Shown here one piece after another: positions 27,756 to 47,400 of a DNA stretch of 64,000 bases (positions are counted from its first letter, which is position 1; each line of letters starts with the position of its first letter). The translations under genes were made by a program, and so were the position numbers. The notes beneath the pieces were generated by a model. It saw only the letters and a list, made by a program, of their open reading frames with translations. It made no database searches and was not told where the DNA came from. The DNA comes from Octopus sinensis (taxonomy: Eukaryota): contig NC_043011.1 of assembly GCF_006345805.1 (NCBI RefSeq), positions 28,966,464 to 29,030,463 of the forward strand, written 5' to 3'.

Positions 27756-27769
27756 CCAATTTCATTATA

Positions 27770-29163
27770 GTGGGGTGTTGGTCCTACTTAAAAGAGATCC
27801 AGTTTCAGAGAAAAAGTTAATTTTTTCTGACTCAGAGGGTAGGCTGGTCGTCTTGGATCTGACATTCAGTTGTGGTAAGGAGATCAGGCTGGTGGCGGTG
27901 TATGCACCTAGTTTACGTCAGACTGATTATTTTCGAGACCTAGAGAAATTTCTTGGTACGTCAAAATCCATAGTTATGTTAGGGGACTTTAACACTATTG
28001 TCAATGCGAGGGTTGATAGTGTTGGCTCGAACGAAGATAGGAAACCTAACAGTGGCTTCCGGGATCTACTAAGTCGCTTTCAGCTAGTAGATCCCTACAG
28101 ACTGGAATTCCCAGACGCTCAACTGTGGACGTGGTCAAATAGCGACGGGTCTTCCAAATCTTATATAAATAGGTTTTCTATTATAAAAATAGATAAAGAC
28201 ATAGTTAAGTGTCCACAGTTTCACTTGGTCAGTTACAGTGATCACAAGATGGTCACTGGTAAACTGTACCTAGATAAGTTATGTAGTAAGGGAACCGGTT
28301 ACTGGAAACTCAATAAGTCCTTTTTGGCGATTGAGGAGTACAGAAGCTGGATTAAGTTACTAATTCAGAGGGCGTTAACCGGTTCCATTATTAACAACAA
28401 ATAGTGGTTCGCCCTCAAAAGAGCCATAAAATATGAGTCCATTAGCTATAGAATAGGACTAGTAGCTAGAAGGCGTAAGGAAGAAAAGGGGCTAGTTAAG
28501 GCCTTAGAGGAAGCCATAAGATTTGGTGATGGGTCCCAAGTGAGGTTGAAGAGACTGGAATTAAACCAGCATCTCGAAACCAAACACATGAGTTGTATCA
28601 TCAGAGCTAGACTTTGCGCAATGGGGAGCGAGGGGATTAAGGCTGCCGGATGGGCACGAGTTGTGGAAGATCAACGTGGAAACGATTCTACAATTTGGTC
28701 TGTTACGAACAAACAAGGCGTTTTGGTAAACGAACCTGAGGAGATGTGTCGGACTTTTCAGGAGCACTTTGCCCAGCTTTTCAGGGGTAGTGGTGGGCCA
28801 GATGAGAGGGTGGACCTTACGGACTTCCTCGACGGGCTGCTGCGCCTCTCAGGGCAGGATGCGGAGAGCTGTGAAGGGTCAATCAAGCCTGAGGAGGTGA
28901 CTGAGGCCATAACTGACTGTGGCAGAGGTAAGGCGCCGGGACTATATGGTTTACCCTACAAGCTATATAAAAGTATGCCAGACTTGTTCGGGCCCGTACT
29001 GGCCAGCATTTTCGCGAACTGGCAGCAGAATGGGAGGATTCCCAGATCTGTACGCCGGGGAGTGGTGACGCTGATCACGAAGGACCTGGACAAGGAGGAT
29101 AGAATAGATAACTTTAGGCTCATCACCTTGCTGAACGTGGAGGTGAAGATTTTGGCCAAGGTG
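27770..29163 (+). mobile_element. Tx1-like LINE copy A: ORF2 fragment (APE endonuclease to RT start), divergent subfamily
   Basis: 'VAVYAP', 'LGDFN', 'SDHKMV', 'GYWKLN', 'GKAPGLYGLP', 'NFRLITLLNVEVKILAKV'. Confidence 0.9.
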
Positions 29164-29351
29164 TTTCAGAATATTCCCAACACAATCTTTTCCATTTTCT
29201 CCATACTGTTCTTTCCATAGAAACTCATCAAGGTACGAGTCCACCATGGTGGAATGTACCCCCATCATCATTTTAAATTTTCTTTTTGCATTCTTCCAGT
29301 AACGTTCCACAGAATTTGTGTGTACACCTGTTAGCGGATCCACAAAATTCC
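29164..29351 (-). pseudogene. Merlin / IS1595(ISXO2)-family DDE transposase C-terminal fragment
   Basis: 'NFVDPLTGVHTNSVERYWKNAKRKFK...DSYLDEFLWKEQYG' matches the characteristic 'NFVDP.TG.HTN.IE..W...K...YLDEF.W' motif. Confidence 0.85.
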
Positions 29352-29531
29352 GGGACCACTCTGCGATACAAGTACCCGTTTCTTATACTCCAATAATGTT
29401 TTACTTCCTTTACATAATTGTTTCTTGAATGTATGTTTATATTTCAATGAAACAAGATATTACTTATACTGGGCATCAAACAACTAGTCATACTACACTG
29501 GTATAAATACAGATATCGTGTGTACATGCTG

Positions 29532-29990
29532 TATTTGCCCCCCCCCCCTCCATTGACAACTGGTGCTGGCTACTTTTCATCTTTGTAAAAAAATAGAAAC
29601 CATTGTGCGTAATTTGGGGGAAGATTTTGCTGTTATATCTAGCATGCCTAACGATCATGTAAGATATTCTTTTGTTGGCTCGTTTTGTGTAGTAAATGTA
29701 TTACAGTAAATACCTTTATCTGTAAACTTTCGAATGAAACTGGAATTGTCACCTTTGTTCCTTTTGCCTTTACTGTTGTATTAAAAAAGGCGATAATTTT
29801 TAAATTTCATAATACTTAAAGAAATTTAAGCATTAAATTAACCACATCATTTAATTAGAAATAATTAGTTGTAGTAGTTGAGCTATAATGTATATGATAA
29901 TATTTAGAGAGAAATTAATATTTCAATGTAGTATTAGATGCGACATCAGTGAACTTACAATGCAAATATTTTATATATGAGATTGGTGAA
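29532..29990 (+). promoter_or_regulatory. Orphan U1 upstream/promoter region with no U1 gene; fused to LINE copy B
   Basis: Aligns continuously with 18150-18604 (e.g. 'atctagcatgcctaacgatcatgtaagat', 'ttacaatgcaaatat', 'gagattggtgaa'); homology stops at the equivalent of -13. Confidence 0.88.
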
Positions 29991-32900
29991 GTCAGAACCT
30001 CAGTGTCGGTTGCTTTATTTTTGTTGCGCGTATATTTCAATTGGTGTCTATTTGTTAGTGTGAGTTCGTCTCTGTGTTTTTTGTGTCATTTGAACTGTTG
30101 TCTTGTGACATACAGTAATTTTCGCCCTAAGGGGCAGAAAATTCCTGCATTTATAATTATTTCTTGTCAGTTGCGACAAGGTTATTTATTTTTTGGATAC
30201 GATGGAGTGTGACCTTGTGTCAAAAAAGGATTTTCCCCGAGATGGGAACAGTTAAAAATATCGGAAACGAAACGGTCAACAAGGACAAACAAAGCTTTTC
30301 AGCTGCAGTAGGTGGCAAAGTTATCGAACTGGAAGTAGTAATGGACAAGCTCTTCCAGTTCAGACAATACATTGTAAAAAAATGGCAAAGAGACTAAGCT
30401 GGTACCGCCCCTGGAAACTGTCCAGGCTATACGAGAGAAAACTGTCGTATACAAGGTATTCAACATCAAGGAGAAGAAAATTGCAGAGGTGAAGAACGAA
30501 GTGGTGGGGCGATGCATGGCTCCCATCTGGAACAAAGTACGCTATGTTAGCCGAGATGTGCGAAGTGCTACAGTTGAAGCGCAATTCGAGTCGGCTAACG
30601 TAGCAAAGGAGATATCCACGAAGACTCTCAAAAATGATGAAATTATGTTGTTACCGACTTATTTAGGCCGGCGAACTGCTAAAATTAGTTGAGGACATAC
30701 CTGCCGGTTATGATGTGATGTGGGTAGCAACAGCAGTCGTGTATGACATGGAAGCTAAGGTATTAATACTAAGCATGAGGATGAAAGAAGAGACGAACTG
30801 GAAGGGTCAGAGTTTGGAGATGGTTGTTCAAGGGGACAACAAAACCCTTGAAAGTTTGCCCGACAGGATCAATGTAGGGGAGGGACACACAATTCGTGTG
30901 TCGGTGGAGGGACGTAGGCCCAGATGCTTCAAGTGTGGGCAGAAAGGCCATGTTCGCTCTACTTGTACCAAAAAAAAAAAACAACAGTTGAAGTCCCCCC
31001 CAAAAAAACTGCTGTGAGGCAGGAAAACGATGAAAACGAAAAGAAAAAACAAATTGAAAAACAGAAGGAGGAGCAAAAAGAAAATGGAAGAAAGAATGAA
31101 GAACAGAAAAAAGAAGAGAAAAAACAAAAGGAAAGCGAACAGGTGGAATTTGTAACGGTGACGTACAAACGTAAAAAAGAAAGCACCCCAGACTCCCCTC
31201 CCCAAACAAAAAGAAAAACTGCAAGCACACATGAACAACAGCAAAAAATTCCCCAACCCCTCCCAGCTAACACTACCTTCGTAGGTCAGCATTTTAATAA
31301 ACCCCATCCCCCTGTGTTAAAAGGTATAAAAAAATCGGAAAAAATTATATCGTTTAATGAGAAGAACAAGAGAGTTTTAAGACTAATCAAGGCTAATAGC
31401 CGCATGAAAATTCTTAAAATAACTGGAGGCGAGCCCGACGCGCGATATGCAAAAGTCGGAGAGGAGGAGTTTAAAGTAAAGCTCCTCCAGGAACATTTGG
31501 TAAACAAAAACATCAGATGTTACCCAGGAGGCAATAGCTGGGAAGTTAATCATCAGCCCGGCAGCCACTCCTAACCAGAGACCAGTGGTAACGCCGGTGA
31601 AAAGCCCAGCAGCCTCGGGGAGTGAGAGGGAAGCTGGCAGACATAAACTGCCATGACCCCTCTCTCAACCATAAATAATTTATTTTCTTTTACTCAATGA
31701 TTAAGTTAGGTTGTTTGAATGTGCGTGGAATGGGGTCGAGATAGAAACAAGCTTGTTTTCTGAACGACCTCATGACACGGAATAGATGTTATTGTAACCG
31801 AGTCCAAGATGAGTGGACCTCAAGCGTTCTTGCCTCTTCTGTGTGGTTACGAGAAATTTATTTCTCCTAGCCGAGGAGGGGGAAGGGGTGTGGCAGTCTT
31901 TATCAGGAAGAGCTTGGACTTACAGATAAGTACCCTCTTTCTGGACCCAAAAGGCAAGCTGGTTGTACTAGATGTGACTCACATGAGTAAACAGTCCTTC
32001 AGGTTGGTAGCTGCCCACGCTCCTGAGAAGTGTAGGCAGTCTGGTTTTTACCGGAACCTGGAGCACTTTCTGGTGACGTCTAAAACGTTAGTTTTGGTAG
32101 GGGACTTCAACACAGTTTTGGTAGGGGACTTCAACACTATCCTCAATGCGCGGGTCGATAGTGTGGGCTCAACTGATAGGAAAGGGAATCCTTGCCTCAA
32201 GGGTCTACTAGAGAGCTATAATCTAGTAGACCATTACTGACTGGATGAGCCGAACGTTCCACAGTGGACATGGAGTAACAACGACGGCTCACACAGATCG
32301 TACCTAGATAGGGTATTCATTAAGGAAAGAGGTAAGAATAGAGTTAGTTGTCCACGGATCACAAACCTGTGACGTGTGAGGTACACACAGATAAATGTCA
32401 TAGATAGGGACTCGGATAGTGGAAAATGAACAAGTCTATTATGACTTGTGAAGCTTTCCGTACCTGGATTACGGAGTTAGTTCAGAGGGCATTATGTGGT
32501 ACCATCATTAACAATAGATGGTGGTACACCTTCAACAGAGCCATTCGTTCAGAGTCCATTAGATTTAGCAAGCAGCTAAGTTTAGATAGGACTAGAATAG
32601 AGGGCGATTTAGTTAAGAACTTAGATGAGACAATGGAATCTGGCTCTACATCTAGAGTGTTGGCGGTGAGAACAGTCTTGTGCCGCCACCTCAACGCCAA
32701 GCATGAAAGCTGCAGAGTCAGAGCCAAGCTACGCGCAGGGAAATGAGAAGGTTGGAGAGGTTGGGAGGCAATCCTAATGAAATTGGATGCGGTAAGTCTG
32801 TTTCTGCCTATGCTGATGACGTCACCTTCATCGTGTCCAACGAAGCACAGCTACCTCGTGTAGAAGGTGCTCTCCGAGGATACGAAGCGGTGACAGGGGC

Positions 32901-34365
32901 AAAAGTTAACAAGGACAAGTCCACCGGTTTGGGCCTTGGAACCTGGAGGAACAAGCCGATATCGTCCAGTGTTGTTGGACACTGGACAGATGGTCCTGTT
33001 AAATTGCTTGGAGTTTGGTTTGGTTCAGATTCCCAGACGGAGAAAAATTGGAGCGAGGTAGTGAACAAGGTAGAAGCATTAGTACGGAAGTGGTCCGGAA
33101 GGCATCTTTCCTTGAAAGGGAGGGCGGAGGCATTACAGGTGTTTATAGCATCCGTCATCACCTACCACCTGACTGTCGTGCCTTGCCCCAATTTGTGGCT
33201 AAGCAAGTTGGAACGACTCCTTTTCTGCTTTTTGTGGAAGGGAGGAAAGCCACTTGTAAGGCGCTCCGTGTGTTGCCAGGAACCGCTAAAGGGTGGGCTA
33301 CGGATGCCTTGGCTAATGATGTGTAGGCATGCGTTGAGGCTGAGACATCTCTGGTGCCACCAGGAGGGTGATAACGTGTGTAGTCCACTGGCAGAGGAAT
33401 TCTTCCCGCGACCGGATGCTTTGGAGAGATTTAAACCCGGTTTCATTAAAAGACGGAACCTGACTTTATGACAGAAGGAGTGCCAACAGGCACTCTGGCT
33501 GATCCACAAGATGGGCAAGGCCGGCAGCGGGAATACCACCTCGGTGTTCTATAAAGGGCTGGTAGAGGCAAAAGATGACGACGTCCTAGGAGGGGCTCTG
33601 GGGTTCGATGAGAATCAACTCTCCAACCTGTTAAGAAGACTTTCAGGCTGGGGTATTTGGATAATTATCAAAAATCCCTGACTTGGCAGTGCTATAGGAA
33701 TGCCTTACCTGTTCATGGTAAGTTATTTAGGTACAGAATGTCAGTGCCACCGCCGTGTCCAAGATGTGGGTTGGACGATGAAACCGTTCAACACGCGTTT
33801 GTACATTGTCAGGAGCTGTCAAGCTTGATAAGTTACGTAGAACACGTGTTGTTGCATCTGGGACGAGTACAGCTGTCAGCTGGTTCTATAATAAAGATGA
33901 TACCGCCAACTGGACTCTAAAAGGAAGGTGAGGCTTGTTTTCACTGTACGGTTGCTGTACTGAAAGAGTGTGTGTGGAGAACCAGAATGGAAGGTTTTGT
34001 GACAGGGTGCTTTGTCTCTGGCCCCGGTCTGTTAAACTACTTCAGATTTCATCTGAAGAGCAAGATGGAGTTGGAGAGGAGGAACCTGCCACAGAAAGAG
34101 TATGTGAAATGTTGGAAGGATGTGATAAGAAAGGTGGGTGTGAGTAACCCAGCTTAATCATCAATGAAAGGAGAAAATAGTTGCCGGGTAAAAGTCTGTA
34201 CTGTTCTATACTTACCTGGCTAATTAAAAAAAAAAATTTAAAGTGTAGTATTATATTATTCTAAATTTTTAAATACCATACGAACTACATAACTTTTTTG
34301 TAATTGTGTTTTGTCCTGTAGTGTCCTATCTTTGTATCGATTTTTATGATCATAATAAAGATTTT
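29991..34365 (+). mobile_element. Tx1-like LINE copy B: 5'UTR, ORF1 (ATG 30202), ORF2 (~31697-34157, most of RT deleted near 32745), 3'UTR ending AATAAAGATTTT
   Basis: ORF1 CCHC knuckle CFKCGQKGHVRSTC; EN motifs VGDFN; RT 'AYADDV'; C-terminal zinc finger CPRCGLDDETVQHAFVHC; several stops. Confidence 0.92.
34208..34220 (+). other. Perfect 13-nt copy of the U1 5' end (ATACTTACCTGGC) in the 3' region of copy B
   Basis: Identical to 14761-14773. Confidence 0.8.
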
Positions 34366-34380
34366 ATACTAACCTGTCAC
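34366..34380 (+). other. Degenerate U1 5'-end remnant between copies B and C (putative TSD)
   Basis: ATACTAACCTGTCAC matches U1 nt 1-15 at 13/15 and is preceded by AAAGATTTT as at 43664-43672. Confidence 0.7.
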
Positions 34381-36982
34381 TTGTCTTGGGAATCCTTTTT
34401 CATCTGCGAATCAAGAAATTGGCTGCCTATTTTTGTTAAGTGAGTTCGTTTTTTGCTCATTGTTGTTTTGTGTTTCTCACGTTAATTTGAACTATTGTCC
34501 GTTGTGTGACAATTTTCGCCCTACAGGGCTGAAAATTCTGTTTATGAACATTTTTATTACCTTTGTGGTAATTTTTGGAAAATTTGTTAAAACTTGTTTC
34601 TTGTCGTAATTTGACAAATGGAATTCGATTTAACGTCGAAAAAAGACTTCCCTGTGATGGGAAAAGGCAAACATAATAAGGATGTCGAGTTTTGAAAACA
34701 GTCTTTTTCGGCCGCAGTGGGCAGAACCGTAACGGAAGTGGAATTCAAAATAGAACAGTTGTTTGAATACCGGAACTTGGTCAAAAAGGAAGGCAACGAA
34801 ATAAAACTTGTACCGCCGCAAGTGATATTACAAGAGATAAAGGCCAAGACAGTTGTGTACAAGGTGTACAGTATCAAGGAGAAAAAAATAAGGTGTTGAA
34901 TAAAATTCGCTACATCAGTCGAGGTGCCACCGTTGAAGCACATTTCGACTTGGCTGATGTGGCAAAGGAGATTTCGTCAATGACTTTAAAAAATGAGGAT
35001 ATTATGTTATTACCCACCTATATGGGCAAAAGAACAGTAAAACTTTATGTGGAAGATATACCTATAGGATACAATGTAATGTGGGCAGCAGCAGTGGTTC
35101 TGCATGACATAGAGCAGAAAGTCTCAATTCTGCAGATGAAAAGGAAAGAGGTAAACTGGAAGGGACAAGCACTCGAGCTCCTCGTTCAAGCCGAGAATAA
35201 TGTACTGGAAAACCTGCCCGATTGGCTATTTATTGATGAGCGACTTTCAATGAGAGTAGCAGTGGATGGGCGGAAACCCAAGTGTTTCAAATGTGGTGAA
35301 AAGGGTCACGTCTGCTCCAACTGCGTAAAAAAAAGAAAATCAGTGAAGCCCCTCCTCAAAGTGCTTCAAATACAGAAAAAGAGGAGGGGAAAAAGGATCC
35401 CAAGACTGCAACAAGGGATAAAACCGGAACAGAAGAAAAGCAAGATAAAACGCAAGAACCAATGAATTTCACACAAGTAACATACAAAAGAAAAAAAGAA
35501 AATACCCTGGACTCCCCACCCCAAACAAAGAAAAAAACAGCAAACACTGCAGAGACACATCCAAAACAAATTCCCCAGTCCTATCCCCAGTTCGCCAAGC
35601 CCCACCCCATAAAACAAGATCCAAAAAATTGTTAAAAAAAGAATGAAAGAATTGTGGCATTCGATGAGAGGAACAATAGAGTGTTCAAACACTTCAAATT
35701 CTCAAAACTTAAGTTATTTAGCAAGTCTGCAGACACCAAGTCAACCACTCGTTTTGCTAAAATAAAGACGAGTGGAAAAAGAAAACTCTTCAAGAACATT
35801 TGAAAAATAATTACATTAGAGATGTAAGTAACGAAATACTGGAGGGCAAACTAACTATAACCCCGGCAACCACACCTACCCAGAGATGTGGCAACGCCGG
35901 TTAAGAGCCCTGCAGTTACGACCATAAGGGAGGAAGAAGAGGAAGCATGCAGACTCAAACTGCCATGCTCCCTGTCCCAATCATAAGTAAAATTTTTTTT
36001 CTCCGTCAATGGTCAAGTTGTGAATGTGCATGGAATGGGGTTGAAATGGAAACAAATTTGTTTCCTGCATGACCTCACGACACGCGGAGTGGATGTGGCT
36101 AAATGAGTCCAAGATGAGCGGGGCCCAAGCGTTCTCGCCTCTTCTGAATGGTTTCGAGAAATTTATTTCTCCTAGCCAAGGAAGAGGAAGGGGTGTGGCA
36201 GTCCTTATCAGGAAGAGCTTGGACTTGCAGGTAAGTACTATCTTTCTGGACTCAGAAGGTAGGCTGGTCGTTCTGGATGTGACACATGTAAGTAACAGTC
36301 CTTCAGGTTGGTGGCTGTCTATGCTCCTAACGAGTGTGGGCAGTTGGGTTTTTTTGGGGACCTGGAGCACTTTTTAGCGACGTCGAAAATGGTAGTTTTG
36401 GTAGGGGACTTTAACACTATCCTCGATGTACGGATCAATAGTGTTGGTTCCACTGATAGGAAGGGGAATCCTAGCCTCAAAGGTCTACTAGAGAGCTTTA
36501 ATCGAGTAGACCATTACTGACTGGATGAGCTGAATGTTCCACAGTGGACGTGGAGTAACAATGACAGTTCAAAAAGATTGTATATAGATAGGGTACTCAT
36601 TAGGAAAAGAGATAAGGATATGTTTAGTTGTCCAGTTTCACATTGTGCCTTCAACGGATCACAAATTTGTGACTTGTGAGGTGCAATTAGATAAGTGTCA
36701 TAGACAGGGACCCTCGAAGGGTAGAGCGGAGGTGGTGCAGGTGTTTATAGCATCTGTAATCACCTACCACCTGTTTGTTGTACCTGCCCCGATTTTTGTC
36801 TAAACAAGCTGGTACGACTCTTCCACTTTTTGTGGAGAGGGGGAAAGCCACTTGTGAGGTGCCCCGTGTGCTGTCAGGAACCACTAAAGGTGGCTTGGGG
36901 ATACCATGGCTAATGATGCACAGACATGCATTGAGGCTGACACATCTCTGGTGCCACCTGGAGGGTGATAAGGTGTGGAGCC
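34381..36982 (+). mobile_element. Tx1-like LINE copy C: 5'UTR, ORF1 (ATG 34618), EN, deletion at ~36715 into the post-RT region, 3'-truncated
   Basis: 'MEFDLTSKKDFPVMG', CFKCGEKGHVCSNC, EN motifs. Confidence 0.9.
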
Positions 36983-38002
36983 AACAAAAGGAAAAAATCC
37001 AACACCCCGGACTCCCCACCCCAAACAAAAAGAAAAATAAATGCAGACGAACAACACAAAAAAATTTTCCAAACCCACCCTGCTGGTACTACGTTTGTAG
37101 GACAGCATTTCATTAAACTCCAACCCCCAACTTTAAAAGGTTTTAAAAAAACAGATAAGTGTATAGCATATAATGCGAAAAATGAGAGAGTGGTGTGGTT
37201 TATAAAAGCAAGATCTCACATCAAATGTTTTAAAACCACAAAAAAAGACCCTGAATGGAAATACGCAAAGGTCGGCGAGGAAGAGAGACTCTTCCAACTG
37301 CATGTGAAGGACAATCTCATCAAAGATGTCACCCAGGAGGTGATGGCTGGGAAAGTGCACATCAGCCCGGCAGCCACTCCATCCCAGAGCCCGGTGGCAA
37401 CGCCGGTGAAATGCCCAGCAACAACGGAGAGTGTGGGGGAGGCAGGCAGACATAAGCTGCCATGCTCCCTCTCACAACCGTAAGTAGAAAACTTTCTTCT
37501 TTCATTGATGATTAAGTTGGGCTGTATAAATATGCGTGGAATGGGGTCGAAATGGAAACAGGCCTGTTTGCTGAACGACCTCACGACACACAGAATAGAT
37601 GTAGCCATTGTCACCGAGGCCAAGATGAGAGGACTACAAGCATTCTCGCCTCTTCTGAATGGTTACGAGAAATTTATTTCTCCTAGCCGAGGAGGAAGTG
37701 CAGGCGTGGCAGTCCTTATCAGGAAGAACTTGGACTTACAGGTAAGTACTGTCTTTCTGGAACCAGAAGGCAGGATGGTTGTACTAGATGTGACTCATAT
37801 GAGTAAACAGTCCTTCAGGTTGGTAGCTGTCCATGCCCCTAAGGAATGTAGGCAGTCTGGTTTTTACCGGGACCTGGAGCACTTTCTATTGGCGTCTAAA
37901 ACGTTAGTTTTGGTAGGGGACATCAATACTATCCTTGATGCACGGGTCGATAGTGTGGGCTCAACTGATAGGAAAGAGAATCCTTGACTCAAGGGTCTAC
38001 TA
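36983..38002 (+). mobile_element. Tx1-like LINE copy D: ORF1 3' half plus EN N-terminus
   Basis: ORFs 36965-37483 and 37505-37987. Confidence 0.9.
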
Positions 38003-41000
38003 AGATAGAACCACCACCAGAAACATTAAATGCTATCCGCGAAAAAATTGTAGTGTACAAAATTTACAATTTAAAGGAAAAAAAAATCAGTGATGTAAAA
38101 TACGAAGTAATCAAAAGGTGCTTGGCACTGATATGGGGAAAAATACATTACGTTAGCTGAGGAGTGAGAAGTGCAACAATTGAAGCTCATTTCAACTCGG
38201 CTAGTGTAGCAAAGGAAGTTTCAACGCAAACGTTGAAAAACGAACTAATTATGCTGCTGCCCACTTACTTGGACCGCAGAACGGTTAAAATAACAGTCGA
38301 AGACATTCCAGTCGGTTTTGACATGATGCGAGTGGCTGTGATTTTCGACGTGGAGCAGAAGATAACGGTATTGAGCATGAAGAAAAAAGAACCGGACAAT
38401 TGGAAGGGACAAATTCTTGAAATGGTCGTCCAAGCGGAAAATTCAACACTTGAAAATTTGCCAGATAGGGTTTTCGTGGGGGAGGGGCACACCATCCGTG
38501 TAGCGGTGGAGGGACGTAGGCCTAGGTGCGTCAAGTGCGGGCAAAAGGGCCACGTTCGCTCTGCCTGTATTAAGAAAAAAACGGGTGACGCCCTTCCTCC
38601 AAGTGCTGTGAAAATCACAGAAGATAAAAAATAAAACTGTAATGACTAAAGAAACCAAAGGAAAGAAACAAAGCGAAAACGAAAAGGAGGAAAATAAAGA
38701 AAAACAAAAAGGAGAGGAAGATAAACAAACAGAATCTGAAGAAATGGAGTATACAACTGTCACAAATAAAAGGAAGAAAACTCATACCCTGGACTCTCCA
38801 CCCTAAACAAAAAAGAAAAATAATACAGATGAACAAAATAAAAAAAAAATTCCCCAATGGCACTACTTTAATTGGCCAGCGATTCACCATACCCCACCCT
38901 CCAACATTCAAAGGTCTTAAAAAAACGGACAGAATAGTTATGTACAATGTGAAAAACAAGAAGGTGATTCATTTAATCAAAGCCCACCTGCGTATAAAAT
39001 CTTTTAAAAGTGCTGACAACGAAACTGATTTTCGTTACGCGAAGATCGGTGAGGAGGAGTGGAGAGAGAAGCTCCTCCAAGACCACATAAAAGAGAACCA
39101 AATAAGAGACGTTACACAGGATGTGATAGCTGGCAAACTAATCATCAACCCGGCAGCCACTCCTACCCAGAGCCCGGTGGCAAGCCCAAGAAAGAGCCCA
39201 GCTGAAGCGGAAAGCGTGAGGGAAGCTGGCAAACAAAAAGTGCCATGCTCCCTCTCACAACCGTAAGTGACTTCTTTTATTTTTTTCTATGATTAAATTG
39301 GGTAGTTTGAATGTGCGTGGAATGGGGTCGAAATGGAAACAGGCTTGTTTGCTGGACGGCCTCATTTCACATAGAAGAGATGTGGCTGTGATCACTGAGT
39401 CCAAGATGAGGGGACCTGAAGCGTTCTCACCCCGCCTCAATGGTTACGAGAAATTTACTTCTACGAGACTGAGGGGAGGTGCAGGCGTGGCAGTCCTGAT
39501 CAAGAAGGGCTTACTGATAAGTACCGTCTTTCTGGACCCAGAAGGTAGACTGGTTGTCCTAGATGTAACACAGGAAAGTAAGCAGTACTTCAGGTTGGTA
39601 GCTGTCTATGCTCCTAACTTGCATGGGCAGTTGGGTTTTTTTCGGAACCTGGAGTACTTTCTGTTGACATCTAAAACGTTAGTTTTGTTAGGGGACTTCA
39701 ACACTATCCTCAGTGCGCGGGGCGATAGTGTAGGCTCCACCCATAGGGAGGGGAATCCTTGCCTCAAGAGTCTACTATACAGCTTTAATCTAGTAGACCG
39801 CTACCGACTGGATGAGCCGAACGTTCCACAGAGGACGTGGAGTAATAACGACGGCTCATGCAGATCGTACATAGATAGAATTTTTGTTAACAAAAGAGAT
39901 AAGAATAGCTTTAGCTGTCCACAATTTTGTATTGTGCCTTACACAGATCACAAACTAGTGACATGTGAGGTACATCTAGATAAGTGTCATAGACAGGGAC
40001 CCGGTTATTAGAAAATGAACAAGTCCATTTTGGCTTGTGAACTTTCCATACCCGGATTAAGGAGATAGTGCAGAGGGCATTGTGGGACCATCATTAATAA
40101 TAGGTGGTGACACGCCCTCAAGAGAGCCATCCGTCTTGAGTTCATTAGATTTAGCAAGCAGCAAAGTTTAGATAGGACTAGAATAGAGGGTGACTTAGTT
40201 AAGAGTCTAGATGAGGCAATGGAATCTGGCTCCACATCCAGAGTGTCGGCAGCGAGAACGGCCTTGTACCGTCACCTCAATGCCAAACACGAAGGGTGCC
40301 GAGTCAGAGCTAAGTTACGTGCTGGGAAACGAGAGGGTATTAACGTAGCCAGATGGACATGTCATGTGGAGAGTCAGAAGACCTGTATTAAGTCTTTAAA
40401 TGACAAGCAGGGACGCAAGATTTATGGACAGGGGGAGATGCATTTTGCTTGGGTGTTTGGGGAGAGCGGTCCGCTTCAGCGCGGGGAGCCCTTAAGGGAC
40501 TTCCTAACTGGCGGACCTCGACTCTCGGCATTAGAGGCTGGATGCTGTGAGGGCCCAATCACTCCCGCAGAGGTGCTGGTCGAATGCACAGGAGAAAAGT
40601 CTCCGGGACTGGATGGTCTGCCATACGAGTTTTATCGTTCAATGCCGGATTTGTTTGGAGAGGTTATGTCCAGCGTCTATGCAAACTGACAGCAGAACAG
40701 GAGAATTCCCAGTACTGTGAGCCGGGGAGTTGTGATGCTGGTCCAGAAAGACCCAAGCAAGGGGGATAATATCAGTAACTACAGGCCCATAACTCTACTT
40801 AACGTAGAGTTAAAGATTTGGTCAAGGTGTTAGCAAAAAGGTTGACGGTTGTCGTGGAGAAGCTTGTCGGGAAGGCACAGACTCGTGCAATCCCAGGCAG
40901 GTCGATCTAGGACAAACTTCATCTTCTCCACTACACCTTAGAGAGGGCAAAGGAGGAGGGGCATTGATCCACTTGGACCAGAGTAAAGCATTCGATAGGA

Positions 41001-41388
41001 TAGACCACCGGTACCTGGGGTCGGTCATCGATGTGGCTGGGCTAGGCCCTGGTTTTCGCGGGTGGATCGCCGCAATGTATAGTGGCATCAAGTCCACCGT
41101 CCAGATAAACGGTAACCTAACGGAGCTGTTTTCGATTAAGCAGTCTGTTTGTCAAGGGTGCCCCTTGTCTCTGATTCTGTATGTTTTGACCCTGGAGCCA
41201 TCGCTGAGGAGGCTGGAGAAGTTAGGCGGCAACCCTAATGAGATTGGATGTTGTAGGTTCACTACTGCTTATGCGGACGACGTCACTCATCGTGTCTAAA
41301 GAAGCACAACTACCTCATGTAGAAGATGCTCTCCAAAGATATGAAGCGGTAGCAGGGGCAAAAGTTAACAAGGACAAGTCCATCGGTT
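38003..41388 (+). mobile_element. Tx1-like LINE copy E: 5'-truncated ORF1, EN, linker, RT through YADD
   Basis: 'NYRPITLLN', 'LDQSKAFDRIDH', 'QGCPLS', 'AYADDVT'; multiple stops and frameshifts. Confidence 0.92.
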
Positions 41389-43672
41389 ATTTGTGAAAAA
41401 TTTCTTTTTTCTTGTCATTTGTGACAAGTTCCTTGTTTTTATAATGGAACTTGAATTAATGTCAAAAACAGATTTTCCCGAGATGGGAGAAGGTAAAAAA
41501 TGGCTACACAGGCGAAACAAAGTTTTTCTAACACCTTAGGCGGCAGTAGAACTGGAAGTGGCAATGGAAAAGCTCTTCCAGTTCAGAAAATTAATTCAAA
41601 AAACCAGCAAGGAAACGCGATTGATACCACCCCCTGAAACCATGCAAGCAATCTGCAAGAAGAAGGTGATCTACAAAGTGTACAACATAAAAGAGAAAAA
41701 AATTGCAGACGTAAAAAATGAAATAGTAGAACGTTGTATGGCGCCAATTTGGAATAAGGTTCGCTACGTTAGCCGAGGAGTGAGAAGCACTACGATAGAA
41801 GCACATTTCGAGTTGGCTAATGTAGTGAAAGAAATTTCAACACAAACATTGAAAAGTGAACACATCCTGCTGCTGCCCACTTACTTAGGTCGCAGAACAG
41901 CAAAAGTTACAATAGAGGACATACCCAGTGGTTATGAAGTAATGTGGGCAGTAACAGCAGTCATTTTCGACGTAGAGGAAAAATTGACTATTTTGAGCAT
42001 GAGGAAGAAAGAGGTGAGAAATTGGAAAGGCCAACAACTTGAGATGATTATTCAAGCGGATAATTCTACGCTGGAAAGTTTGCCAGACAGGGTCTTCGTG
42101 GGGGAGGGGCATACTATACATGTATCGGTAGAGGGACGTAGACCCAGATGTTTCAAGTATGGACAGAAGGGTCATGATTGCTCAGAATGCACAAAGAAAA
42201 AAACGGTTAATGCCCCTCCTCAAAACACAGAACAACACAGAAACAACAAAAGAAAGCACGGGAAAAAAAAACAAACTGAAATTCAAAAGAAGGAAAAGAA
42301 AAAGAATGAAAAACAGGAAGAAATGGAATACACAACTGTGACAAACAAAAGGGAAAAATCCAACACCCCAGACTCCCCACCCCAAACAAAAAAAATAAAT
42401 GCAGATGAACAACACAAAAAAACTCTCCAATCCCACCCCGCTGGTACTACATTTGTAGGACAGCATTTCAATAAACCCTACCCCCAACTTTAAAAGGTTT
42501 TAAGAAAACCGATAAATGTATAGCATATAATGCGAAAAATGAGAGAGTGGTGTAGTTTATAAAAGCAAGATCTCACATCAAATGTTTTAAAACTACAGAG
42601 AAAGACCCTGAATGGAAATACGCAAAGGTCGGCGAGGAGGAGTGGAAGAAGAGAGTCTTCCAACAGCATGTGAAGGACAATCTCATCAAAGATGTCACCC
42701 AGGAGGTGATAGCTAGGAAAGTGCAAATCAGCCCGGCAGCCACTCCATCCCAGAGCCCGGTGGCAACGCCAGTGAAATGCCCAGCAACTACGGAGAGTGT
42801 GGGGGAGGCAGGCAAACATAAGCTACCATGCTCCCTCTCACAACCGTAAGTAGAAAACTTTCTTCTTTCATTGATGATTAAGTTGGGCTGTCTAAATGTG
42901 CATGGAATGGGGTCGAAATGGAAACAGGCCTGTTTGCTGAACAACCTCACGACACACAGAATAGATGTAGCCATTGTCACCGAGTCCAAGATGAGAGGAC
43001 CCCAAACATTCTCGTCTCTTCTGAATGGTTACGAGAAATTTATTTCTCCTAGCCGAGGAGGAGGTGCAGGCGTGACAGTCCTTATCAGGAAGGACTTGGA
43101 CTTACAGGTAAGTACTGTCTTCCTGGACCCAGAAGGTAGGCGGGTTGTCCTGGATGTAACTCGTGTGAGTAAGCAGTTCTTGAGGTTGGTAGCTGTTTAT
43201 GCTCCTAATGAGTGTAGGCAGACTGGTTTTTATCGGAACCTGGAGCACTGTCTCGATGCACAGGTCGATAGTGTTGGCCCGACTGATAGAAAAGGAATCC
43301 TTGCCTCAAGGCTCTACCAGCGAGCTTTACTCTAGTAGATCGTTTTCGACTGGATGAGCCAAACGTTGCGCAGTGGACGTGGAGTAACAATGACAGCTCA
43401 CGTAGATCGTATATAGATAGGGTATTTGTTAAGGAACGAGATAGGAATAGCATTAGCTGTCCACAATATTCTGTCGTGCTTTACACGGATCACAAACTTG
43501 TGACATGTGAGGTACATGTAGATAAATGCCATAGACATGGTCCAGGGTACTGGAAAATGAACAAGTCTATTTTGACCTGTGAAGCTTTTTGTATCCGGAT
43601 TAAGGAATTAGTCCAGAGGGCATTATGTGGCACCATCGTTAATAATAGATGGTAGCTCGCCCTAAAGATTTT
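41389..43672 (+). mobile_element. Tx1-like LINE copy F: partial 5'UTR, ORF1 (ATG 41444), EN; deletion to the terminal AAAGATTTT
   Basis: ORFs 41558-42493 and 42871-43335. The last 9 nt match the 3' end of copy B. Confidence 0.9.
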
Positions 43673-43689
43673 ATACTTACCTGGCACAG
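43673..43689 (+). other. Perfect 17-nt U1 5' end (ATACTTACCTGGCACAG) between copies F and G (putative TSD/target)
   Basis: Identical to nt 1-17 of all three U1 genes in the window. Confidence 0.9.
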
Positions 43690-46600
43690 ATTTTTCCTCG
43701 GATTACGTCGGATTATTTTACGCTGTAAGCTGTTATGTTAGTTCGTTCTGTTCTGGATTTACACGTACAATTTTTGGATTATTAACTTGTGGAACAAAGT
43801 AATTTACACCCTTCGGGGTAGAAAATTTCTTTTTATATATGAACTATTAACTCAGTGTGGAATTAACTTTTATCTTGTCACTTGGATTTCAATATGGATC
43901 TTGACTTAATGTCAAATTCTGATTTTCCCGAGATGGGAGAAGTTATAAATAATGGAAAGCAAAAGGATACAAAGGAGAAACAAAGTTTTTCGGAAGCCGT
44001 TGGAGGCAATGTTATAGAACTGGAAGTAGCAATGGGGGATCTCTTTCAGTTCAGAAAGTTAATACAAAGGTATGGAGAAGAAACAAGATTAATACCGCCC
44101 CCTGAAACTTTACAAGCAATCCGTGAGAAGACGGTAATTTACAAAGTATATAACATTAAGGAAAAAAAATAGCGGATGTAAAAAATGAATTGGTAGAACG
44201 GTGTATGGCGCCAATTTGGATCAAGGTTCGCTATGTTGGCCGAGGAGTGAGAAGTGCTACGATTGAAGTGCATTTCGAGTTGGCTAGCATAGCGAAGGAA
44301 ATTTCAACTCAAACGTTGAAAAGTGTAGACATCCTGTTGCTGCCCACGTACTTAGGCCGCAGAACAGCTAAGGTAACAATAGAGGATATACCAACAGGTT
44401 ACGATGTAATGTGGGCAGCAACAACATTCATATTCGACGTAGAGGAGAAATTGAACATTTTAAACATGAGGATGAAAGAGGCAAAATTTTGGAAAGGCCA
44501 GCAGCTTGAAATGATCGTTCAAGCGGACAATGCAACGCTGGAGAGCTTGCCAGACAGGGTCTTCGTGGGGGATGGACACTATGCGGGTATCAGTGGAGGG
44601 ACGTAGGCCCAGATGTTTCAAATGTGGGCAGAAGGGTCACGTTCGTCCAGAGTGCAAAAAGAAAAAACCCGTTAATGCCCCCCTTCAAATGGCTGTGGAG
44701 AACAAAGCAGACATCACAGCAACAACAAAAGAGAACACCCGGAAAAAGCAAAATGAAAGTCAAAAGGAGGAAAAGAAAATGAATGGAAAACAAAACGAAA
44801 ACGAATAGGAGGTGGAAAATAATTTATCAAATAGAAAAGAACTGGAAGTAATGGAATATACGACTGTAACCAACAAAAGGAAGAAATCCAATACCCCGGA
44901 CTCCCCACCCCAAACAAAAAGAGAAACAAACGCAGAAGAACAAAACAAAAAAATTATCCAATCCCACCCCGCTGGCACTACTTTTGTAGGCCAGCATTTC
45001 ATTGAACCCCAGCCCCCAACTTTAAAAGGATTCAAAAAAACAGATAGGTGCATTGCTTATAATGCGAAAAACGAAAGAGTAGTCTGGTTCATAAAGGCGA
45101 AACCAAACATAAAATGTTTCAAATCATTGGAAAAAGACCCGGATTGGAAGTATGCGAAGGTTGGAGAGGAGGAGTGGAAGGAGAGACCCTTCCAACTACA
45201 TGTGAAGGACAACCTGATTAAAGATGTCACACAAGAGGTGATAGCTGGAAAATTGAATATTAGCCCGGCAGCCACTCCATCCCAGAGCCCGGTGGCAACG
45301 CTGGTTAAATGCCCAGCAACAACGGAGAGTGTGGGGGAGGCAGGCAGACATAAGCTGCCATGCTCCCTCTCACAACCGTAAGTAGAAAACTTTCTTCTTT
45401 CATTGATGATTAAGTTGGGCTGTATAAATGTGCGTGGAATGGGGTCGAAATGGAAACAGGCTTGTTTGCTGAACGACCTCATGACACACAGAATAGATGT
45501 AGCCATTGTCACCAAGTCCAAGATGAGAGGAACCCAAGCGTTCTCGCATCTTCTCTGGTTACAAGAAATTTATTTCTCCTAGCCGAGGAGGAAGTGCAGG
45601 CGTGGCAGTCCTTATCAGGAAGGACTTGGACTTACAGGTAAGTACTGACTTTCTGGACCTAGAAGGTAGGCTGGTTGTCCTCGATGTAACTCACGTGAGT
45701 AAGCAGTCCTTCAGGTTGGTAGCTGTCTATGCTCCTAATGAGTGTAGGCAGACTGGTTTTTATCGGAACTTGGAGTACTTTCTAGTGACGTCTAAAACGG
45801 TAGTATTGGTAGGGGATTTCAACACTATCATCGATGCGCGGATCGATAGTGTGGGCTCGTCTGATAGAAGAGGGAATCCTTGCCTCAAGGGTCTACTGAC
45901 GAGCTTTAATCTAGTAGATCGGTTTCAAATGGATGAGCCGAGCATTCCACGGTGGACGTGGAGTAACAATGACGGCTCACGCAGATCGTATATAGATAGG
46001 GTATTTGTTAAAGAACGAGATAGGAATAACATTAGCTGTCCACAATTTTGTATTGTGCCTTACACGGATCACAAACTAGTGACGTGTGAGGTACATATAG
46101 ATAAATGCCATAGACAGGGACCCGGGTACTGGAAAATGAACAAGTCTATTTTGGCTTGTGAAGCTTTCTGTAACCAGATTATGGAATTTGTCCAGAGTGC
46201 ATTATGTGGAACCATCATTAATAATAGATGGTGGATCGCCCTCAAAAGAGCCATCCGTTTGGAGTCCATTAGATTTAGCAAGCAGCTAAGTTTAGATAGG
46301 ACTAGAATAGAGGGCGAATTAGTTAAGAACTTAGACGAGGCAATGGAATCTGGCTGTACATCTGGATTGTTGGCAGCGAGAACGGTCTTGTACCATCACC
46401 TCAGCACCAAGCATGAGAGGTGTAGAGTCAGAGCTAAGCTACATGCAGGGAAACGAGAAGGTATTAACGTTGCCGGATGGGCCCGTCGTGAGGAGAGTCA
46501 GAAGGGCAAAAAGTCCTCTATTAAGTCTTTAACTGACGAACAGGGTCACAAAATCTATGGACAGGAGGAGATGCAGAAGGTCTTTCACCAGCATTTCGCC

Positions 46601-47400
46601 CGGTTGTTTGGGGATGGCAGGTCTTAAAGGACTTCCTAGCCAGTGGGCCTCGATTCTCGGCATGTGAGGTGGAATGTTGTGAAGGATCGATCACTCCCGT
46701 GGAGGTAAGAGAGGTTTTGGCCAAATGCGCCGGGGCTGGATGGTCTGCCCTATGAGTTCTATTGTTGTATGCTGCACTGGTTCAGGGATATACTGGCAGG
46801 CGTCTATGCAAGATGGCAACAGAATGGGAGGATCCCCAGTTCTGTGAGCCGGGGAGTTGTGATGCTGGTCCAGAAAGACCCGAGCAAGGGGTATAGTATT
46901 AGTAATTATAGGCCCATAACTCTACTTAATGTTAAAGATTTTGGCCAAGGTGTTAGTAAAAAGGCTGACAGCTGTCGTGGAGAAACTTGTCAGGAAGGCA
47001 CAGACATGTGCAATCCTAGGTTGGTCGATCGAGGATAATCTTCACCTTCTCCGCTACACTATAGACAGGTCTTAAAGGTCTGTTTGCGATAAGTTATCTA
47101 GGCACGGAATGTCAGTGCCACCAACGTGTCCAAGATGTGGGTTGGACGATGAAACCGTTCAACACGCTTTTGTACATTGTCAGGAGCTGTCAAGCTTGAT
47201 AAGTTACGTAGAACACATGTTGTCGCATCTGGGACGAGTACAGCTGTCAGCTGGATCTATGATAAAGATGATACCGCCAACTGGACTCGCAAAGGAAGGT
47301 GAGGCTTGTTTTCACTGTACGGTGGCAGTACTGAAAGAGTGTGTGTAGAGAACCAGAATGGAAGGTTTGGTGACAGGATCCTTTGTCTCTGGCTCAGTCT
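43690..47400 (+). mobile_element. Tx1-like LINE copy G: full 5'UTR, ORF1 (ATG 43894), EN, linker, RT start, deletion near 47075 to the zinc finger, 3'-truncated
   Basis: ORFs 43882-45381 (frameshifted), 45602-46627 and 47109-47348. Confidence 0.92.

What the first reader, a model, noticed from the sequence alone, without database searches (positions are those of the whole stretch)
29532..47400. Candidate U1-snRNA-targeting Tx1-like retrotransposon stacked in tandem under a captured U1 promoter
Seen: ~460 bp that align with the upstream region of U1 copies 2/3 stop 13 nt before the expected U1 +1 and run directly into the 5'UTR of LINE copy B. Six head-to-tail, same-strand, mutually divergent Tx1/L1-clade copies follow over 17.4 kb. 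The two junctions that retain element ends both contain the U1 5' end (34366-34380, 43673-43689). Known: Tx1-clade APE elements include sequence-specific families (Keno for U2 snRNA genes, Dewa for tRNA-gene spacers, Kibi/Koshi for microsatellites). Inference: this family inserts at the very start of U1 genes, regenerates its target as a TSD and is re-hit, building arrays. Each founder lands at the transcription start of a strong Pol II snRNA promoter. I do not recall a described U1-5'-end-specific family in molluscs; that needs a database check.
Basis: partly seen in the sequence, partly recalled or inferred. Interest (0 to 1): 0.92.

Follow-up and report, generated by a model that had tools for sequence, protein, structure and literature searches.

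The report
Octopus LINE array inside U1 gene
A dead U1 snRNA gene in an octopus-like genome has been filled by at least nine separate insertions of one jumping-gene (LINE) family, all at the first 17 bases of U1, which points to a family that prefers the start of U1 genes, a target not described for LINEs in the papers I could search.

Summary
29449-29990 is a relic of the U1_2/U1_3 upstream unit (80-82% identity). It stops at -13 and runs into a full-length LINE 5' end. The next 17.4 kb holds only same-strand pieces of one L1/Tx1-type family, at least nine lineage fragments rather than six copies. Two junctions read [family 3' terminus ...AATAAAGA-TTTT][U1 nt 1-15/17][full-length 5'UTR].

New evidence:
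- Third codon positions differ about 2-fold more than first and second positions, and dN/dS is 0.2-0.3. The pieces are therefore independent retrotranspositions, not local duplications.
- A near-intact relative in Octopus sinensis has a perfect 18-bp TSD, matching the proposed 17-bp U1 duplication.
- That copy is not in a U1 gene. Its TSD still resembles the array junction, 12/18 in register (p about 4e-4).

Verdict: a U1-5'-end-preferring, array-building LINE is the best reading (about 0.6). The strength of the specificity rests on one locus plus one off-target copy. Promoter capture and Tx1-clade membership are untested. No U1-targeting LINE was found in the searchable literature. I rate it a new member of a known kind, of moderate interest.

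The parts
14761..14924 (+). Intact U1 snRNA gene U1_1 (context: the natural target)
   Evidence: Rfam RF00003, 132.3 bits, full length
18617..18780 (+). Intact U1 snRNA gene U1_2. Its upstream unit is the paralogue of the promoter relic.
   Evidence: Rfam 133.4 bits; upstream alignment
21521..21684 (-). Intact U1 snRNA gene U1_3, the palindromic partner of U1_2
   Evidence: Rfam 133.4 bits; inverted repeat
29449..29990 (+). Relic of a U1 gene upstream (promoter) unit. It ends at -13 relative to U1 +1. U1 -12 to +164 is missing.
   Evidence: 80.1% to U1_3 upstream over 564 nt and 82.5% to U1_2 upstream over 474 nt
29991..32752 (+). Piece B1: about 20 extra nt, a full-length 5'UTR, ORF1 (CCHC), then ORF2 APE up to aa ~353. 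An old lineage, 72% nt identity to the O. sinensis element.
   Evidence: mismatches at codon positions 1/2/3 are 0.20/0.16/0.36
32753..34207 (+). Piece B2: ORF2 aa ~653-1124 (C-terminal part of RT and the zf-RVT-type zinc motif), stop near 34157, and the proximal 3'UTR. A young lineage, 90% nt identity to the O. sinensis element.
   Evidence: near-uniform codon-position mismatches 0.09/0.08/0.12
34208..34220 (+). Perfect U1 nt 1-13. Either a shortened TSD spacer between B2 and X, or embedded in a continuous B2 3'UTR (unresolved).
34221..34365 (+). X: an A-rich start followed by the terminal ~125 nt of the family 3'UTR, ending TGATCATAATAAAGA-TTTT
   Evidence: 95/119 identical to the last 125 nt of the O. 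sinensis element 3'UTR
34366..34380 (+). U1 nt 1-15 with 2 mismatches (ATACTAACCTGTCAC), the spacer between X's 3' terminus and C's full-length 5' end
34381..36716 (+). Piece C: full-length 5'UTR, ORF1, and ORF2 up to aa ~241. The most divergent lineage in the array.
36717..36980 (+). Fragment Cx: ORF2 aa ~777-877 (82% to the O. sinensis element)
36981..38002 (+). Fragment C2: ORF1 aa 328-496 plus ORF2 aa 1-165. 92% identical to F and 88% to G1.
38003..41387 (+). Piece D: ORF1 aa 64 to ORF2 aa 714 (through the RT YADD motif). Truncated at both ends.
41388..43668 (+). Piece F: the last ~55 nt of the 5'UTR, ORF1, and ORF2 up to aa ~281. Its ORF2 breaks off at ...CGCCCTAAAGA.
   Evidence: The AAAGA is a microhomology with the family terminus AATAAAGA.
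43669..43689 (+). TTTT (the last 4 nt of the family 3' terminus) plus a perfect U1 nt 1-17, forming the spacer before G1
43690..47069 (+). Piece G1: full-length 5'UTR, ORF1, and ORF2 up to aa ~563 (80% to the O. sinensis element)
47080..47393 (+). Piece G2: ORF2 aa ~980-1074, the young lineage (92% to the O. sinensis element, 94% to B2). The array breaks off here.
27769..29166 (+). Fragment A: ORF2 aa 65-524 of a more distant relative (49% aa identity), 283 bp upstream of the promoter relic
11003..13190 (-). Fragment M: 5'UTR plus ORF1 aa 3-247 of the family on the opposite strand. No convincing U1 in its 5' flank.
49594..50664 (+). Fragment H: a distant relative (about 50% aa identity) with ORF1 aa 105-463, the ORF2 start and the ORF2 end. 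It lies among Helitron pieces and has no U1 at its 3' side.

Best explanation
An octopod L1/Tx1-type LINE family has filled a U1 gene by repeated insertion at the first nucleotides of U1.

The element is about 5.5 kb. ORF1 carries a CCHC knuckle. ORF2 is APE endonuclease, RT, then a zf-RVT zinc motif. The 3' terminus is ...TGATCATAATAAAGA plus T4 or A4.

The family integrates by target-primed reverse transcription with cuts staggered by 17-18 bp, at a sequence of the form TTTY-AT..YTACCTGG. The extreme 5' end of U1 snRNA genes (ATACTTACCTGGCACAG) provides that sequence.

Shown:
- The 3' end of the element joins U1 at or just before +1.
- The 5' end joins after U1 nt 15-17.
- One U1(1-17) copy therefore lies between neighbouring elements.

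Inferred:
- Each insertion duplicates U1 nt 1-17 and so recreates the recognition sequence on both sides.
- At least five diverged, then-active lineages re-hit the same gene and built a head-to-tail array.
- Later microhomology-type deletions removed many termini and spacers and truncated pieces.
- The specificity is a strong preference rather than absolute. A young copy in O. sinensis sits in a U1-5'-like sequence outside any U1 gene.
For: 1. The array starts at a genuine U1 upstream unit that ends at -13. It lies 8 kb from three intact U1 genes.

2. Every junction that keeps element termini carries U1 starting exactly at +1:
- X-terminus|U1 1-15|C 5' end.
- F...TTTT|U1 1-17|G1 5' end.
- B2|U1 1-13.
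The 13-mer occurs 5 times against 0.05 expected.

3. X is homologous to the terminal 125 nt of the 3'UTR of a TSD-bounded O. sinensis element. The sequence left of U1 +1 is therefore the true family 3' end.

4. The pieces are independent insertions.
- Against the near-intact O. sinensis ORFs, third-position mismatches are 0.29-0.48 and first/second-position mismatches are 0.12-0.28, in nucleotide-level alignments.
- Pairwise dN/dS is 0.19-0.47, mostly 0.2-0.3.
- Pairwise identities range from 65% to 92%.

5. The O. sinensis copy has a perfect 18-bp TSD, TTTCATCGCTACCTGGTG. This matches the 17-nt U1 spacer in length. It matches the array junction TTTTATACTTACCTGGCA at 12/18 in the same register. 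The empirical p is 4e-4 in register and 1.8e-3 for any register.

6. Tandem copies 'sandwiching a TSD' through sequential insertion are documented for Tx1-mobilised elements (PMC4494074). Tandem insertion in U2 genes is documented for Utopia (PMC4640811).
Against: - There is only one U1-associated locus. No genome-wide flank census was possible.
- The single near-intact relative (L005) is not in a U1 gene. The O. bimaculoides fragment (L001) has no U1 within 10 kb.
- U1(1-17) alone against the O. sinensis TSD gives only 9/14 (p = 0.05). The significance depends on including the TTTT, which natural U1 genes here do not have (they read AAAC or AAGC at -4 to -1).
- No U1 body (nt 18-164) is seen at the 3' side of the array, because it is cut off at 47393 and Helitron pieces follow.
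- Five junctions lack U1 and need post-insertion deletions.
- B1 joins the promoter at -13 with about 20 unexplained nt instead of U1 1-17.
- Fragments M, A and H show no U1 flanks.
- The 13-mer at 34208 may be internal to a 3'UTR rather than a spacer.
Confidence: 0.6

Rival explanations
1. Self-targeting rather than U1-targeting. One element landed by chance at the start of a U1 gene. Later copies were attracted by the composite site made of the element's own 3' terminus (…AAAGA-TTTT) plus whatever followed it, or more loosely by the family's own sequence. The U1 17-mer would then be a passenger TSD, and U1 genes as such would not be preferred.
For: The match between the O. sinensis TSD and the array junction becomes clearly significant only when the TTTT is included, and the TTTT comes from the preceding element rather than from natural U1 genes (U1 upstream sequences). 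Several Tx1 families are known to target other transposons (PMC4494074). Family fragments M, A and H in the window lack U1 flanks.
Against: The shared core between the O. sinensis TSD and the array spacer is the U1 part, TACCTGG. The first insertion would still have hit a U1 gene precisely at its start, which is improbable in a Gb-sized genome. The O. sinensis target is not preceded by a family 3' end.
Confidence: 0.15
2. Template-switch chimeras. The family's RT, on reaching the 5' end of a LINE RNA, jumps onto U1 snRNA, copies its single-stranded 5' arm to nt 1, and may jump on to another LINE RNA. This would give LINE-U1(1-13/17)-LINE concatemers in one or a few events, with no specificity for U1 DNA.
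For: The U1 pieces always end exactly at U1 nt 1 and start at nt 13-17, just before stem-loop I. Tx1-mobilised SINEU elements repeatedly acquired U1/U2 5' extensions, attributed to template jumps (PMC4494074). The 13-mer at 34208 lies between two 3'UTR parts where the O. sinensis element has an unrelated 13-mer.
Against: A non-transcribed U1 promoter unit directly abuts the array, which snRNA template switching cannot supply. The pieces belong to lineages that differ by up to 35%, so many separate events are needed anyway. The 17-nt spacer equals the family's TSD length. The O. sinensis copy has no U1 head.
Confidence: 0.1
3. Local duplication. A single chance insertion next to a U1 gene was amplified in place by unequal crossing-over or segmental duplication, and the copies then diverged by neutral decay.
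For: The arrangement is head to tail on one strand. Both spacers share the same TAAAGATTTT-ATACT context. Many illegitimate junctions show that the region is recombination- and deletion-prone.
Against: Divergence between pieces is concentrated at third codon positions and dN/dS is about 0.2-0.3. Most of the divergence therefore arose in functional elements before insertion. Identity varies from 65% to 92% without regard to neighbourhood. The 5'UTR starts of B1, C and G1 are barely alignable, while the U1 spacer is 15-17/17 conserved.
Confidence: 0.05

Closest known systems
Keno (Tx1-clade, APE-encoding LINE specific for U2 snRNA genes; Kojima & Fujiwara 2004, as summarised in PMC4494074 and PMC4640811)
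   Same: It is an APE-type LINE of the L1/Tx1 group that inserts in sense orientation at a fixed nucleotide of a Pol II spliceosomal snRNA gene. The 3' junction is precise and the 5' junction is more variable.
   Different: The target here is U1, at +1 to +17, the very start of the gene; Keno targets an internal U2 site. No U2 is present in the window. A phylogenetic relation to Keno was not tested. Specificity here appears leaky.
Tx1-Mar / SINEU-3 in crocodilians (PMC4494074)
   Same: These are Tx1-type machinery with a long TSD (16 bp there, 17-18 bp here). Tandem copies 'sandwiching a TSD' are produced by sequential insertion into the regenerated target. There is an association between Tx1-type RT and U1/U2 5' sequences.
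   Different: The target there is a Mariner transposon, not an snRNA gene. The U1/U2 sequences there are heads of the mobile RNA, not the integration site.
Utopia (RLE-encoding, U2-specific non-LTR retrotransposons; PMC4640811)
   Same: Several diverged lineages are co-maintained in the same low-copy snRNA gene family. Tandem insertions occur. Some families are leaky and insert into target-like sequences elsewhere.
   Different: Utopia has a restriction-like endonuclease and belongs to the early-branching clade. Its target is U2 nt ~38.
Dada-U1 DNA transposons (PMC3706591, PMC8869645)
   Same: They are the only transposons reported in the searchable literature as specific for U1 snRNA genes.
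   Different: They are class II elements with a DDE transposase and 6-7-bp TSDs. None of those features is present here.
Human LINE-1 ORF2p (PDB 8C8J, 8SXT and others)
   Same: It is the best solved-structure match to the RT region (E about 1e-41) and has the same APE-RT-C-terminal zinc motif layout.
   Different: L1 has loose TTTT/A target preference, a poly(A) tail and a coiled-coil ORF1p without a CCHC knuckle. This family has a CCHC ORF1, almost no poly(A) and a long, sequence-defined TSD.

Membership tests
L1/Tx1 group of APE-type non-LTR retrotransposons | ORF2 with an N-terminal apurinic-like endonuclease, a central RT and a C-terminal zinc-binding motif | tested here: met
   Exo_endo_phos, RVT_1 and zf-RVT hits in window ORFs and in the O. 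sinensis element. The best PDB match is L1 ORF2p.
Tx1 clade (as opposed to the L1 clade proper) | The RT domain groups with Tx1L, Keno, Kibi, Koshi, Mutsu and Dewa in an RT phylogeny | not testable with these tools
   No Repbase or Dfam reference sequences were available. The nearest named protein is a Ciona 'pol-like protein' at 27% identity. Indirect support: cephalopod repeat annotations report L1-Tx1 as a class expanded in coleoids and recently active in O. vulgaris (PMC13282606, PMC8967140).
Tx1 clade | ORF1 with a CCHC zinc knuckle, in contrast to the coiled-coil ORF1 of vertebrate L1 that has no knuckle (from my own knowledge of ORF1 types; I did not check it against a paper here) | tested here: met
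   zf-CCHC in window ORF 34893-35465 and in O. sinensis ORF1 aa 241-257, both just below Pfam's cut-off. The motif CFKCGQKGH is seen directly. No L1-type ORF1 domain hit was returned.
Target-specific LINE for U1 snRNA genes (new) | A substantial fraction of copies with intact ends are flanked by the same target (Kojima's working threshold is >20%, PMC4494074) | tested here: inconclusive
   In the window, 3 of 4 full-length 5' ends abut U1 nt 1-15/17 or the U1 promoter, and 2-3 of 3 3' termini abut U1 +1. All of these lie in one locus. Elsewhere, 0 of 1 copy with intact ends is in U1 (L005), though its TSD is U1-like.
Target-specific LINE for U1 snRNA genes (new) | A reproducible 3' junction at one nucleotide of the target | tested here: met
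   ...AATAAAGATTTT|ATACT at 34365/34366 and TTTT|ATACTT at 43672/43673, and also ...TGTTCT|ATACTT at 34207/34208.
Target-specific LINE for U1 snRNA genes (new) | The element-encoded endonuclease nicks the target sequence specifically | not testable with these tools
   This needs a biochemical assay.
Keno (U2-specific Tx1) | Insertion in U2 snRNA genes | tested here: not met
   Rfam finds only U1 in the window and no snRNA in the related loci.
snRNA-LINE template-switch chimeras (U6-L1 type, SINEU 5' extensions) | An snRNA-derived head fused to a retrocopy, the whole unit flanked by its own TSD at dispersed sites, with no snRNA promoter | tested here: not met
   The U1 promoter unit abuts the array. 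The U1 pieces are preceded directly by a family 3' terminus, not by a TSD. The dispersed O. sinensis copy has no U1 head.
Dada-U1 DNA transposon | DDE transposase, terminal inverted repeats, 6-7-bp TSD | tested here: not met
   Only APE, RT and CCHC domains are present, and the TSD is 17-18 bp.

The most novel reading that the evidence does not exclude
The family may be an obligate U1-gene parasite whose masters are transcribed from the host U1 promoter. Their RNAs would then begin with the U1 5' splice-site-recognition sequence. The U1 nt 1-13 embedded in the B2 3'UTR may be functional: an RNA element that pairs with the nicked U1 target to guide priming, or a U1 mimic. That would make target choice partly RNA-guided.
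Probability: 0.08. Interest if true: 0.75.

Novelty: new member of a known kind. Interest (0 to 1): 0.45.

Why it matters
Site-specific LINEs that live in multicopy RNA genes are the main natural models for safe-harbour, sequence-directed retrotransposition.

For spliceosomal snRNA genes, a 2015 survey (PMC4640811) counts only Keno and Utopia (U2) and the DNA transposons Dada-U1 and Dada-U6. A figure legend in PMC4494074 also lists a Tx1 family with a U5 snRNA target. A LINE that cuts at the first nucleotides of U1 would add a new target.

It would also give a clean example of array building through a regenerated 17-bp target site. And it would provide an APE domain with a long, definable recognition sequence for specificity studies.

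For octopus genomics, it would explain why U1 clusters carry stacks of L1-Tx1 copies.

Tried and rejected
1. I looked for the U1 body (nt 18-164) downstream of the array with blastn-short and Rfam. None was found, because the array is cut at 47393 and followed by unrelated sequence and Helitron/LTR pieces.

2. I looked for U1 next to relatives.
- O. bimaculoides L001: an APE-RT fragment, about 66% nt identity, no U1.
- L002: 54% aa identity on a 3-kb contig, so no usable flanks.
- L003 and L004: 38% aa identity, a high-copy family in an unnamed ENA assembly, ending ...GAAATAAA with unrelated 3' flanks and no U1.

3. I scanned JGI metagenome contigs for the junction pattern and for the ORF2 protein. 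Nothing was found.

4. I tested whether fragment M's 5' flank (13190-13260, minus strand) is U1 or a U1 promoter. There was no significant similarity.

5. I tested whether the ~20 nt between the promoter relic and B1's canonical 5'UTR are a decayed U1 -12..+17. They are not alignable.

6. I tried to decide whether 34208-34220 is a spacer or is internal to B2's 3'UTR.
- X is 80% identical to the O. sinensis 3'UTR end. B2's coding part is 90% identical, and its proximal UTR is 73-85%.
- These figures do not discriminate between the two readings.

7. I could not obtain Kojima & Fujiwara 2004 or any Tx1 reference sequences, so no clade phylogeny was done.

8. Cluster look-ups gave no organism names for the closest ENA and NCBI relatives.


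Full report
**Setting**

The window carries three intact U1 snRNA genes at 14761-14924(+), 18617-18780(+) and 21521-21684(-) (Rfam RF00003, 132-133 bits). U1_2 and U1_3 are the arms of a large tail-to-tail palindrome. The rest of the window is rich in transposons. Helitron and LTR-element domains lie at 48.7-62.7 kb.

Dispersed repeats are 85-90% identical to sequences in loci fetched from Octopus sinensis and O. bimaculoides. The closest protein relatives are from these two species. The window therefore comes from an octopod or a close relative.

- 29449-29990 aligns to the upstream units of U1_3 (80.1% over 564 nt) and U1_2 (82.5% over 474 nt). The two functional upstream units are 85.7% identical to each other.
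- The alignment ends at 29990, which corresponds to U1_2 position -13.
- Only the distal ~85 nt of this unit is a dispersed repeat. The proximal ~400 nt is found only at U1_2, at U1_3 and here.
- The U1 13-mer ATACTTACCTGGC occurs five times against 0.05 expected. Three are in the genes. One is at 43673 (a perfect 17-mer).

**Anatomy of the array**

tblastn with stitched conceptual ORF1 and ORF2, and blastn against a near-intact O. sinensis element, show that 29991-47393 consists only of same-strand pieces of one LINE family.

| Piece | Content |
|---|---|
| B1 | 5'UTR to ORF2 aa 353 |
| B2 | ORF2 aa 653 to the proximal 3'UTR |
| X | last 145 nt of a 3'UTR |
| C | 5'UTR to ORF2 aa 241 |
| Cx | ORF2 aa 777-877 |
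| C2 | ORF1 aa 328 to ORF2 aa 165 |
| D | ORF1 aa 64 to ORF2 aa 714 |
| F | last ~55 nt of the 5'UTR to ORF2 aa 281 |
| G1 | 5'UTR to ORF2 aa 563 |
| G2 | ORF2 aa 980-1074 |

B1 is 72% and B2 is 90% identical to the O. sinensis element. G1 is 80% and G2 is 92%.
- Domains are a CCHC knuckle in ORF1 and Exo_endo_phos, RVT_1 and zf-RVT in ORF2. The best solved-structure match is human L1 ORF2p.
- All pieces are dead. The longest ORF is 341 aa.
- More distant relatives lie at 11003-13190(-), 27769-29166(+) and 49594-50664(+).

**Independent insertions, not local duplication**

I aligned the pieces at nucleotide level to the intact ORFs of the O. sinensis element.
- The old pieces differ at third codon positions by 0.29-0.48, and at first and second positions by 0.12-0.28.
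- Pairwise Nei-Gojobori dN/dS between pieces is mostly 0.2-0.3. Those alignments are protein-guided and so biased downward, but the nucleotide-level result agrees.
- B2 and G2 show nearly flat profiles (0.09/0.08/0.12). They are decayed copies of the same lineage as the O. sinensis element.

Most divergence therefore accumulated under purifying selection in active lineages before insertion. At least five lineages inserted separately into the same spot. This rules out simple in-situ amplification.

**The family's true ends**

The O. sinensis ORF1 homologue (P0096, 63% identity) led to locus L005 (CM016868.1:55975496-56019094).
- L005 holds a 5,526-bp element at 9747-15272.
- ORF1 is intact. ORF2 has one frameshift.
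- The 3'UTR ends ...TGATCATAATAAAGAAAA.
- A perfect 18-bp TSD, TTTCATCGCTACCTGGTG, lies at 9729-9746 and 15273-15290.
- Window segment X aligns to the last ~125 nt of that 3'UTR (95/119).

AATAAAGA-TTTT at 34354-34365 is therefore a genuine family 3' terminus. The 5'UTR starts of C and G1 align with the start of the O. sinensis element, so they are full-length 5' ends.

**Junctions**

Two junctions read [family 3' terminus][U1 from +1][full-length 5' end].
- ...CATAATAAAGATTTT|ATACTAACCTGTCAC|C.
- ...CGCCCTAAAGA-TTTT|ATACTTACCTGGCACAG|G1.

In the second junction, F's ORF2 breaks off at AAAGA, where the other copies read CAAAAGAGCC. A 5-nt microhomology with the terminus AATAAAGA explains this. 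A deletion removed F's 3' 2.9 kb but kept its last four nt and the spacer.

At the left edge, B1 joins the promoter relic at -13 through about 20 nt that cannot be aligned. Five other junctions (B1|B2, C|Cx, Cx|C2, C2|D, D|F, and similarly G1|G2) join a 3'-truncated piece to a 5'-truncated piece without any U1. I read these as later deletions, or as insertions that came with a target deletion. This is inference.

**Target**

The 17-nt U1 spacer equals the family's TSD length. The O. sinensis TSD matches the array junction TTTTATACTTACCTGGCA at 12 of 18 positions in the same register.
- Against 200,000 18-mers drawn from L005, the empirical p is 4e-4 in register and 1.8e-3 for any register.
- The shared core is TACCTGG, which is U1 nt 6-12.
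- With U1 nt 1-17 alone the match is 9/14 (p = 0.05).

So the one dispersed copy with intact ends sits in a sequence resembling the U1 start or the array junction, not in a U1 gene. There is no U1 in the 43 kb of L005. This resembles the leaky Utopia families that insert into U2-like sequences (PMC4640811). It supports a sequence-defined target, but it warns against claiming strict specificity.

**Mechanism proposed**

The steps below are inferred, except where marked as shown.
- A bottom-strand nick is made at or just 5' of U1 +1.
- Reverse transcription is primed from the element terminus (shown by the junctions).
- A top-strand nick is made 17-18 bp downstream (shown by the TSD in O. sinensis and by the spacer length).
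- U1 nt 1-17 is duplicated, so both flanks again carry the recognition sequence.
- Re-insertion produces arrays with a single spacer between units.

Sequential insertion giving 'tandem insertions sandwiching a TSD' is described for Tx1-mobilised SINEU-3, with a 16-bp TSD (PMC4494074).

AATAAA lies only 6 nt from the 3' junction. Transcripts probably end inside the downstream U1 spacer, which could help priming by annealing. This is speculation.

**What is not supported**

Nothing shows that the U1 promoter drives the elements. Only B1 abuts the relic, at -13. The relic itself has diverged 18-20% from its functional paralogues.

Tx1-clade membership is plausible. The family has a CCHC ORF1, and cephalopod repeat annotations list L1-Tx1 as a class expanded in coleoids and recently active in O. 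vulgaris (PMC13282606, PMC8967140). It could not be tested, for lack of reference sequences.

**Unresolved**

The perfect U1 nt 1-13 at 34208 lies between B2's proximal 3'UTR and X. Two readings remain.
- It is a shortened spacer between two insertions. In that case B2 lacks the conserved family terminus.
- It is embedded in one continuous 3'UTR, at the place where the O. sinensis element has an unrelated 13-mer.

The identities do not discriminate. A template jump onto U1 snRNA that ended at its 5' end is a possible origin (compare PMC4494074).

**Novelty**

[quoted passage not shown] The Tx1 target list in PMC4494074 has U2, U5, 5S, satellites, microsatellites and transposons, but not U1. 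Six literature searches found nothing later. Repbase and Dfam could not be checked.

I rate this a new member of a known kind (site-specific APE-type LINEs in snRNA genes), of moderate interest. The central claim rests on one locus.

Noticed in passing
window 18192-22109: U1_2 and U1_3 are the arms of a large tail-to-tail palindrome. The outer arms (promoter plus U1) are 90% complementary. The inner arms are 96-99% complementary up to 20000/20290. The centre is only 289 nt.
   Followed up: partly
window 34208-34220: A perfect U1 nt 1-13 lies between the proximal 3'UTR of piece B2 and the terminal 3'UTR segment X. At this position the O. sinensis element has an unrelated 13-mer. Whether it is a spacer or is embedded in the UTR is unresolved.
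   Followed up: partly
window 30117-30146, 34513-34542, 43806-43835; L005 ~9877-9906: A conserved 5'UTR hairpin (AATTTTC-GCCC-loop-GGGC-A-GAAAATT) is shared by diverged lineages and by the O. sinensis element. One pair covaries (G-C / G-U / A-U). It may be a structured RNA element of the family.
   Followed up: partly
window 48720-49415, 52777-54150, 61841-62743: Pieces of a Helitron lie here: an N-terminal part, a Helitron_like_N domain and a PIF1 helicase. The Helitron is interrupted by LINE fragment H (49594-50664) and by LTR-retroelement RT and integrase pieces at 55593-56633(+) and 58431-59126(-).
   Followed up: partly
window 429-548, 5327-5456, 16432-16516: The distal ~85 nt of the U1_2/U1_3 upstream unit is a dispersed repeat that also occurs at these sites. 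Related SINE-like repeats at 16292-16685 are 83-90% identical to sequences in the O. sinensis and O. bimaculoides loci.
   Followed up: no
window 22914-23198: Two adjacent 137-nt direct repeats are 99% identical (22914-23050 and 23063-23198).
   Followed up: no
L005 9500-9600 and 15440-15560: The O. sinensis element is inserted inside a repeat that carries near-identical ~100-nt palindromic units on both sides (…CCATCTTATCATGGCTAACCACATTGGGGAGGGG…). The host repeat was not identified.
   Followed up: no
L003 5798-10161 and L004 5694-10075: High-copy relatives (38% aa identity, clusters of 352-435 member proteins) from an unnamed ENA assembly also end in ...GAAATAAA with almost no poly(A). Their 3' flanks are unrelated, so that branch shows no shared target.
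   Followed up: partly
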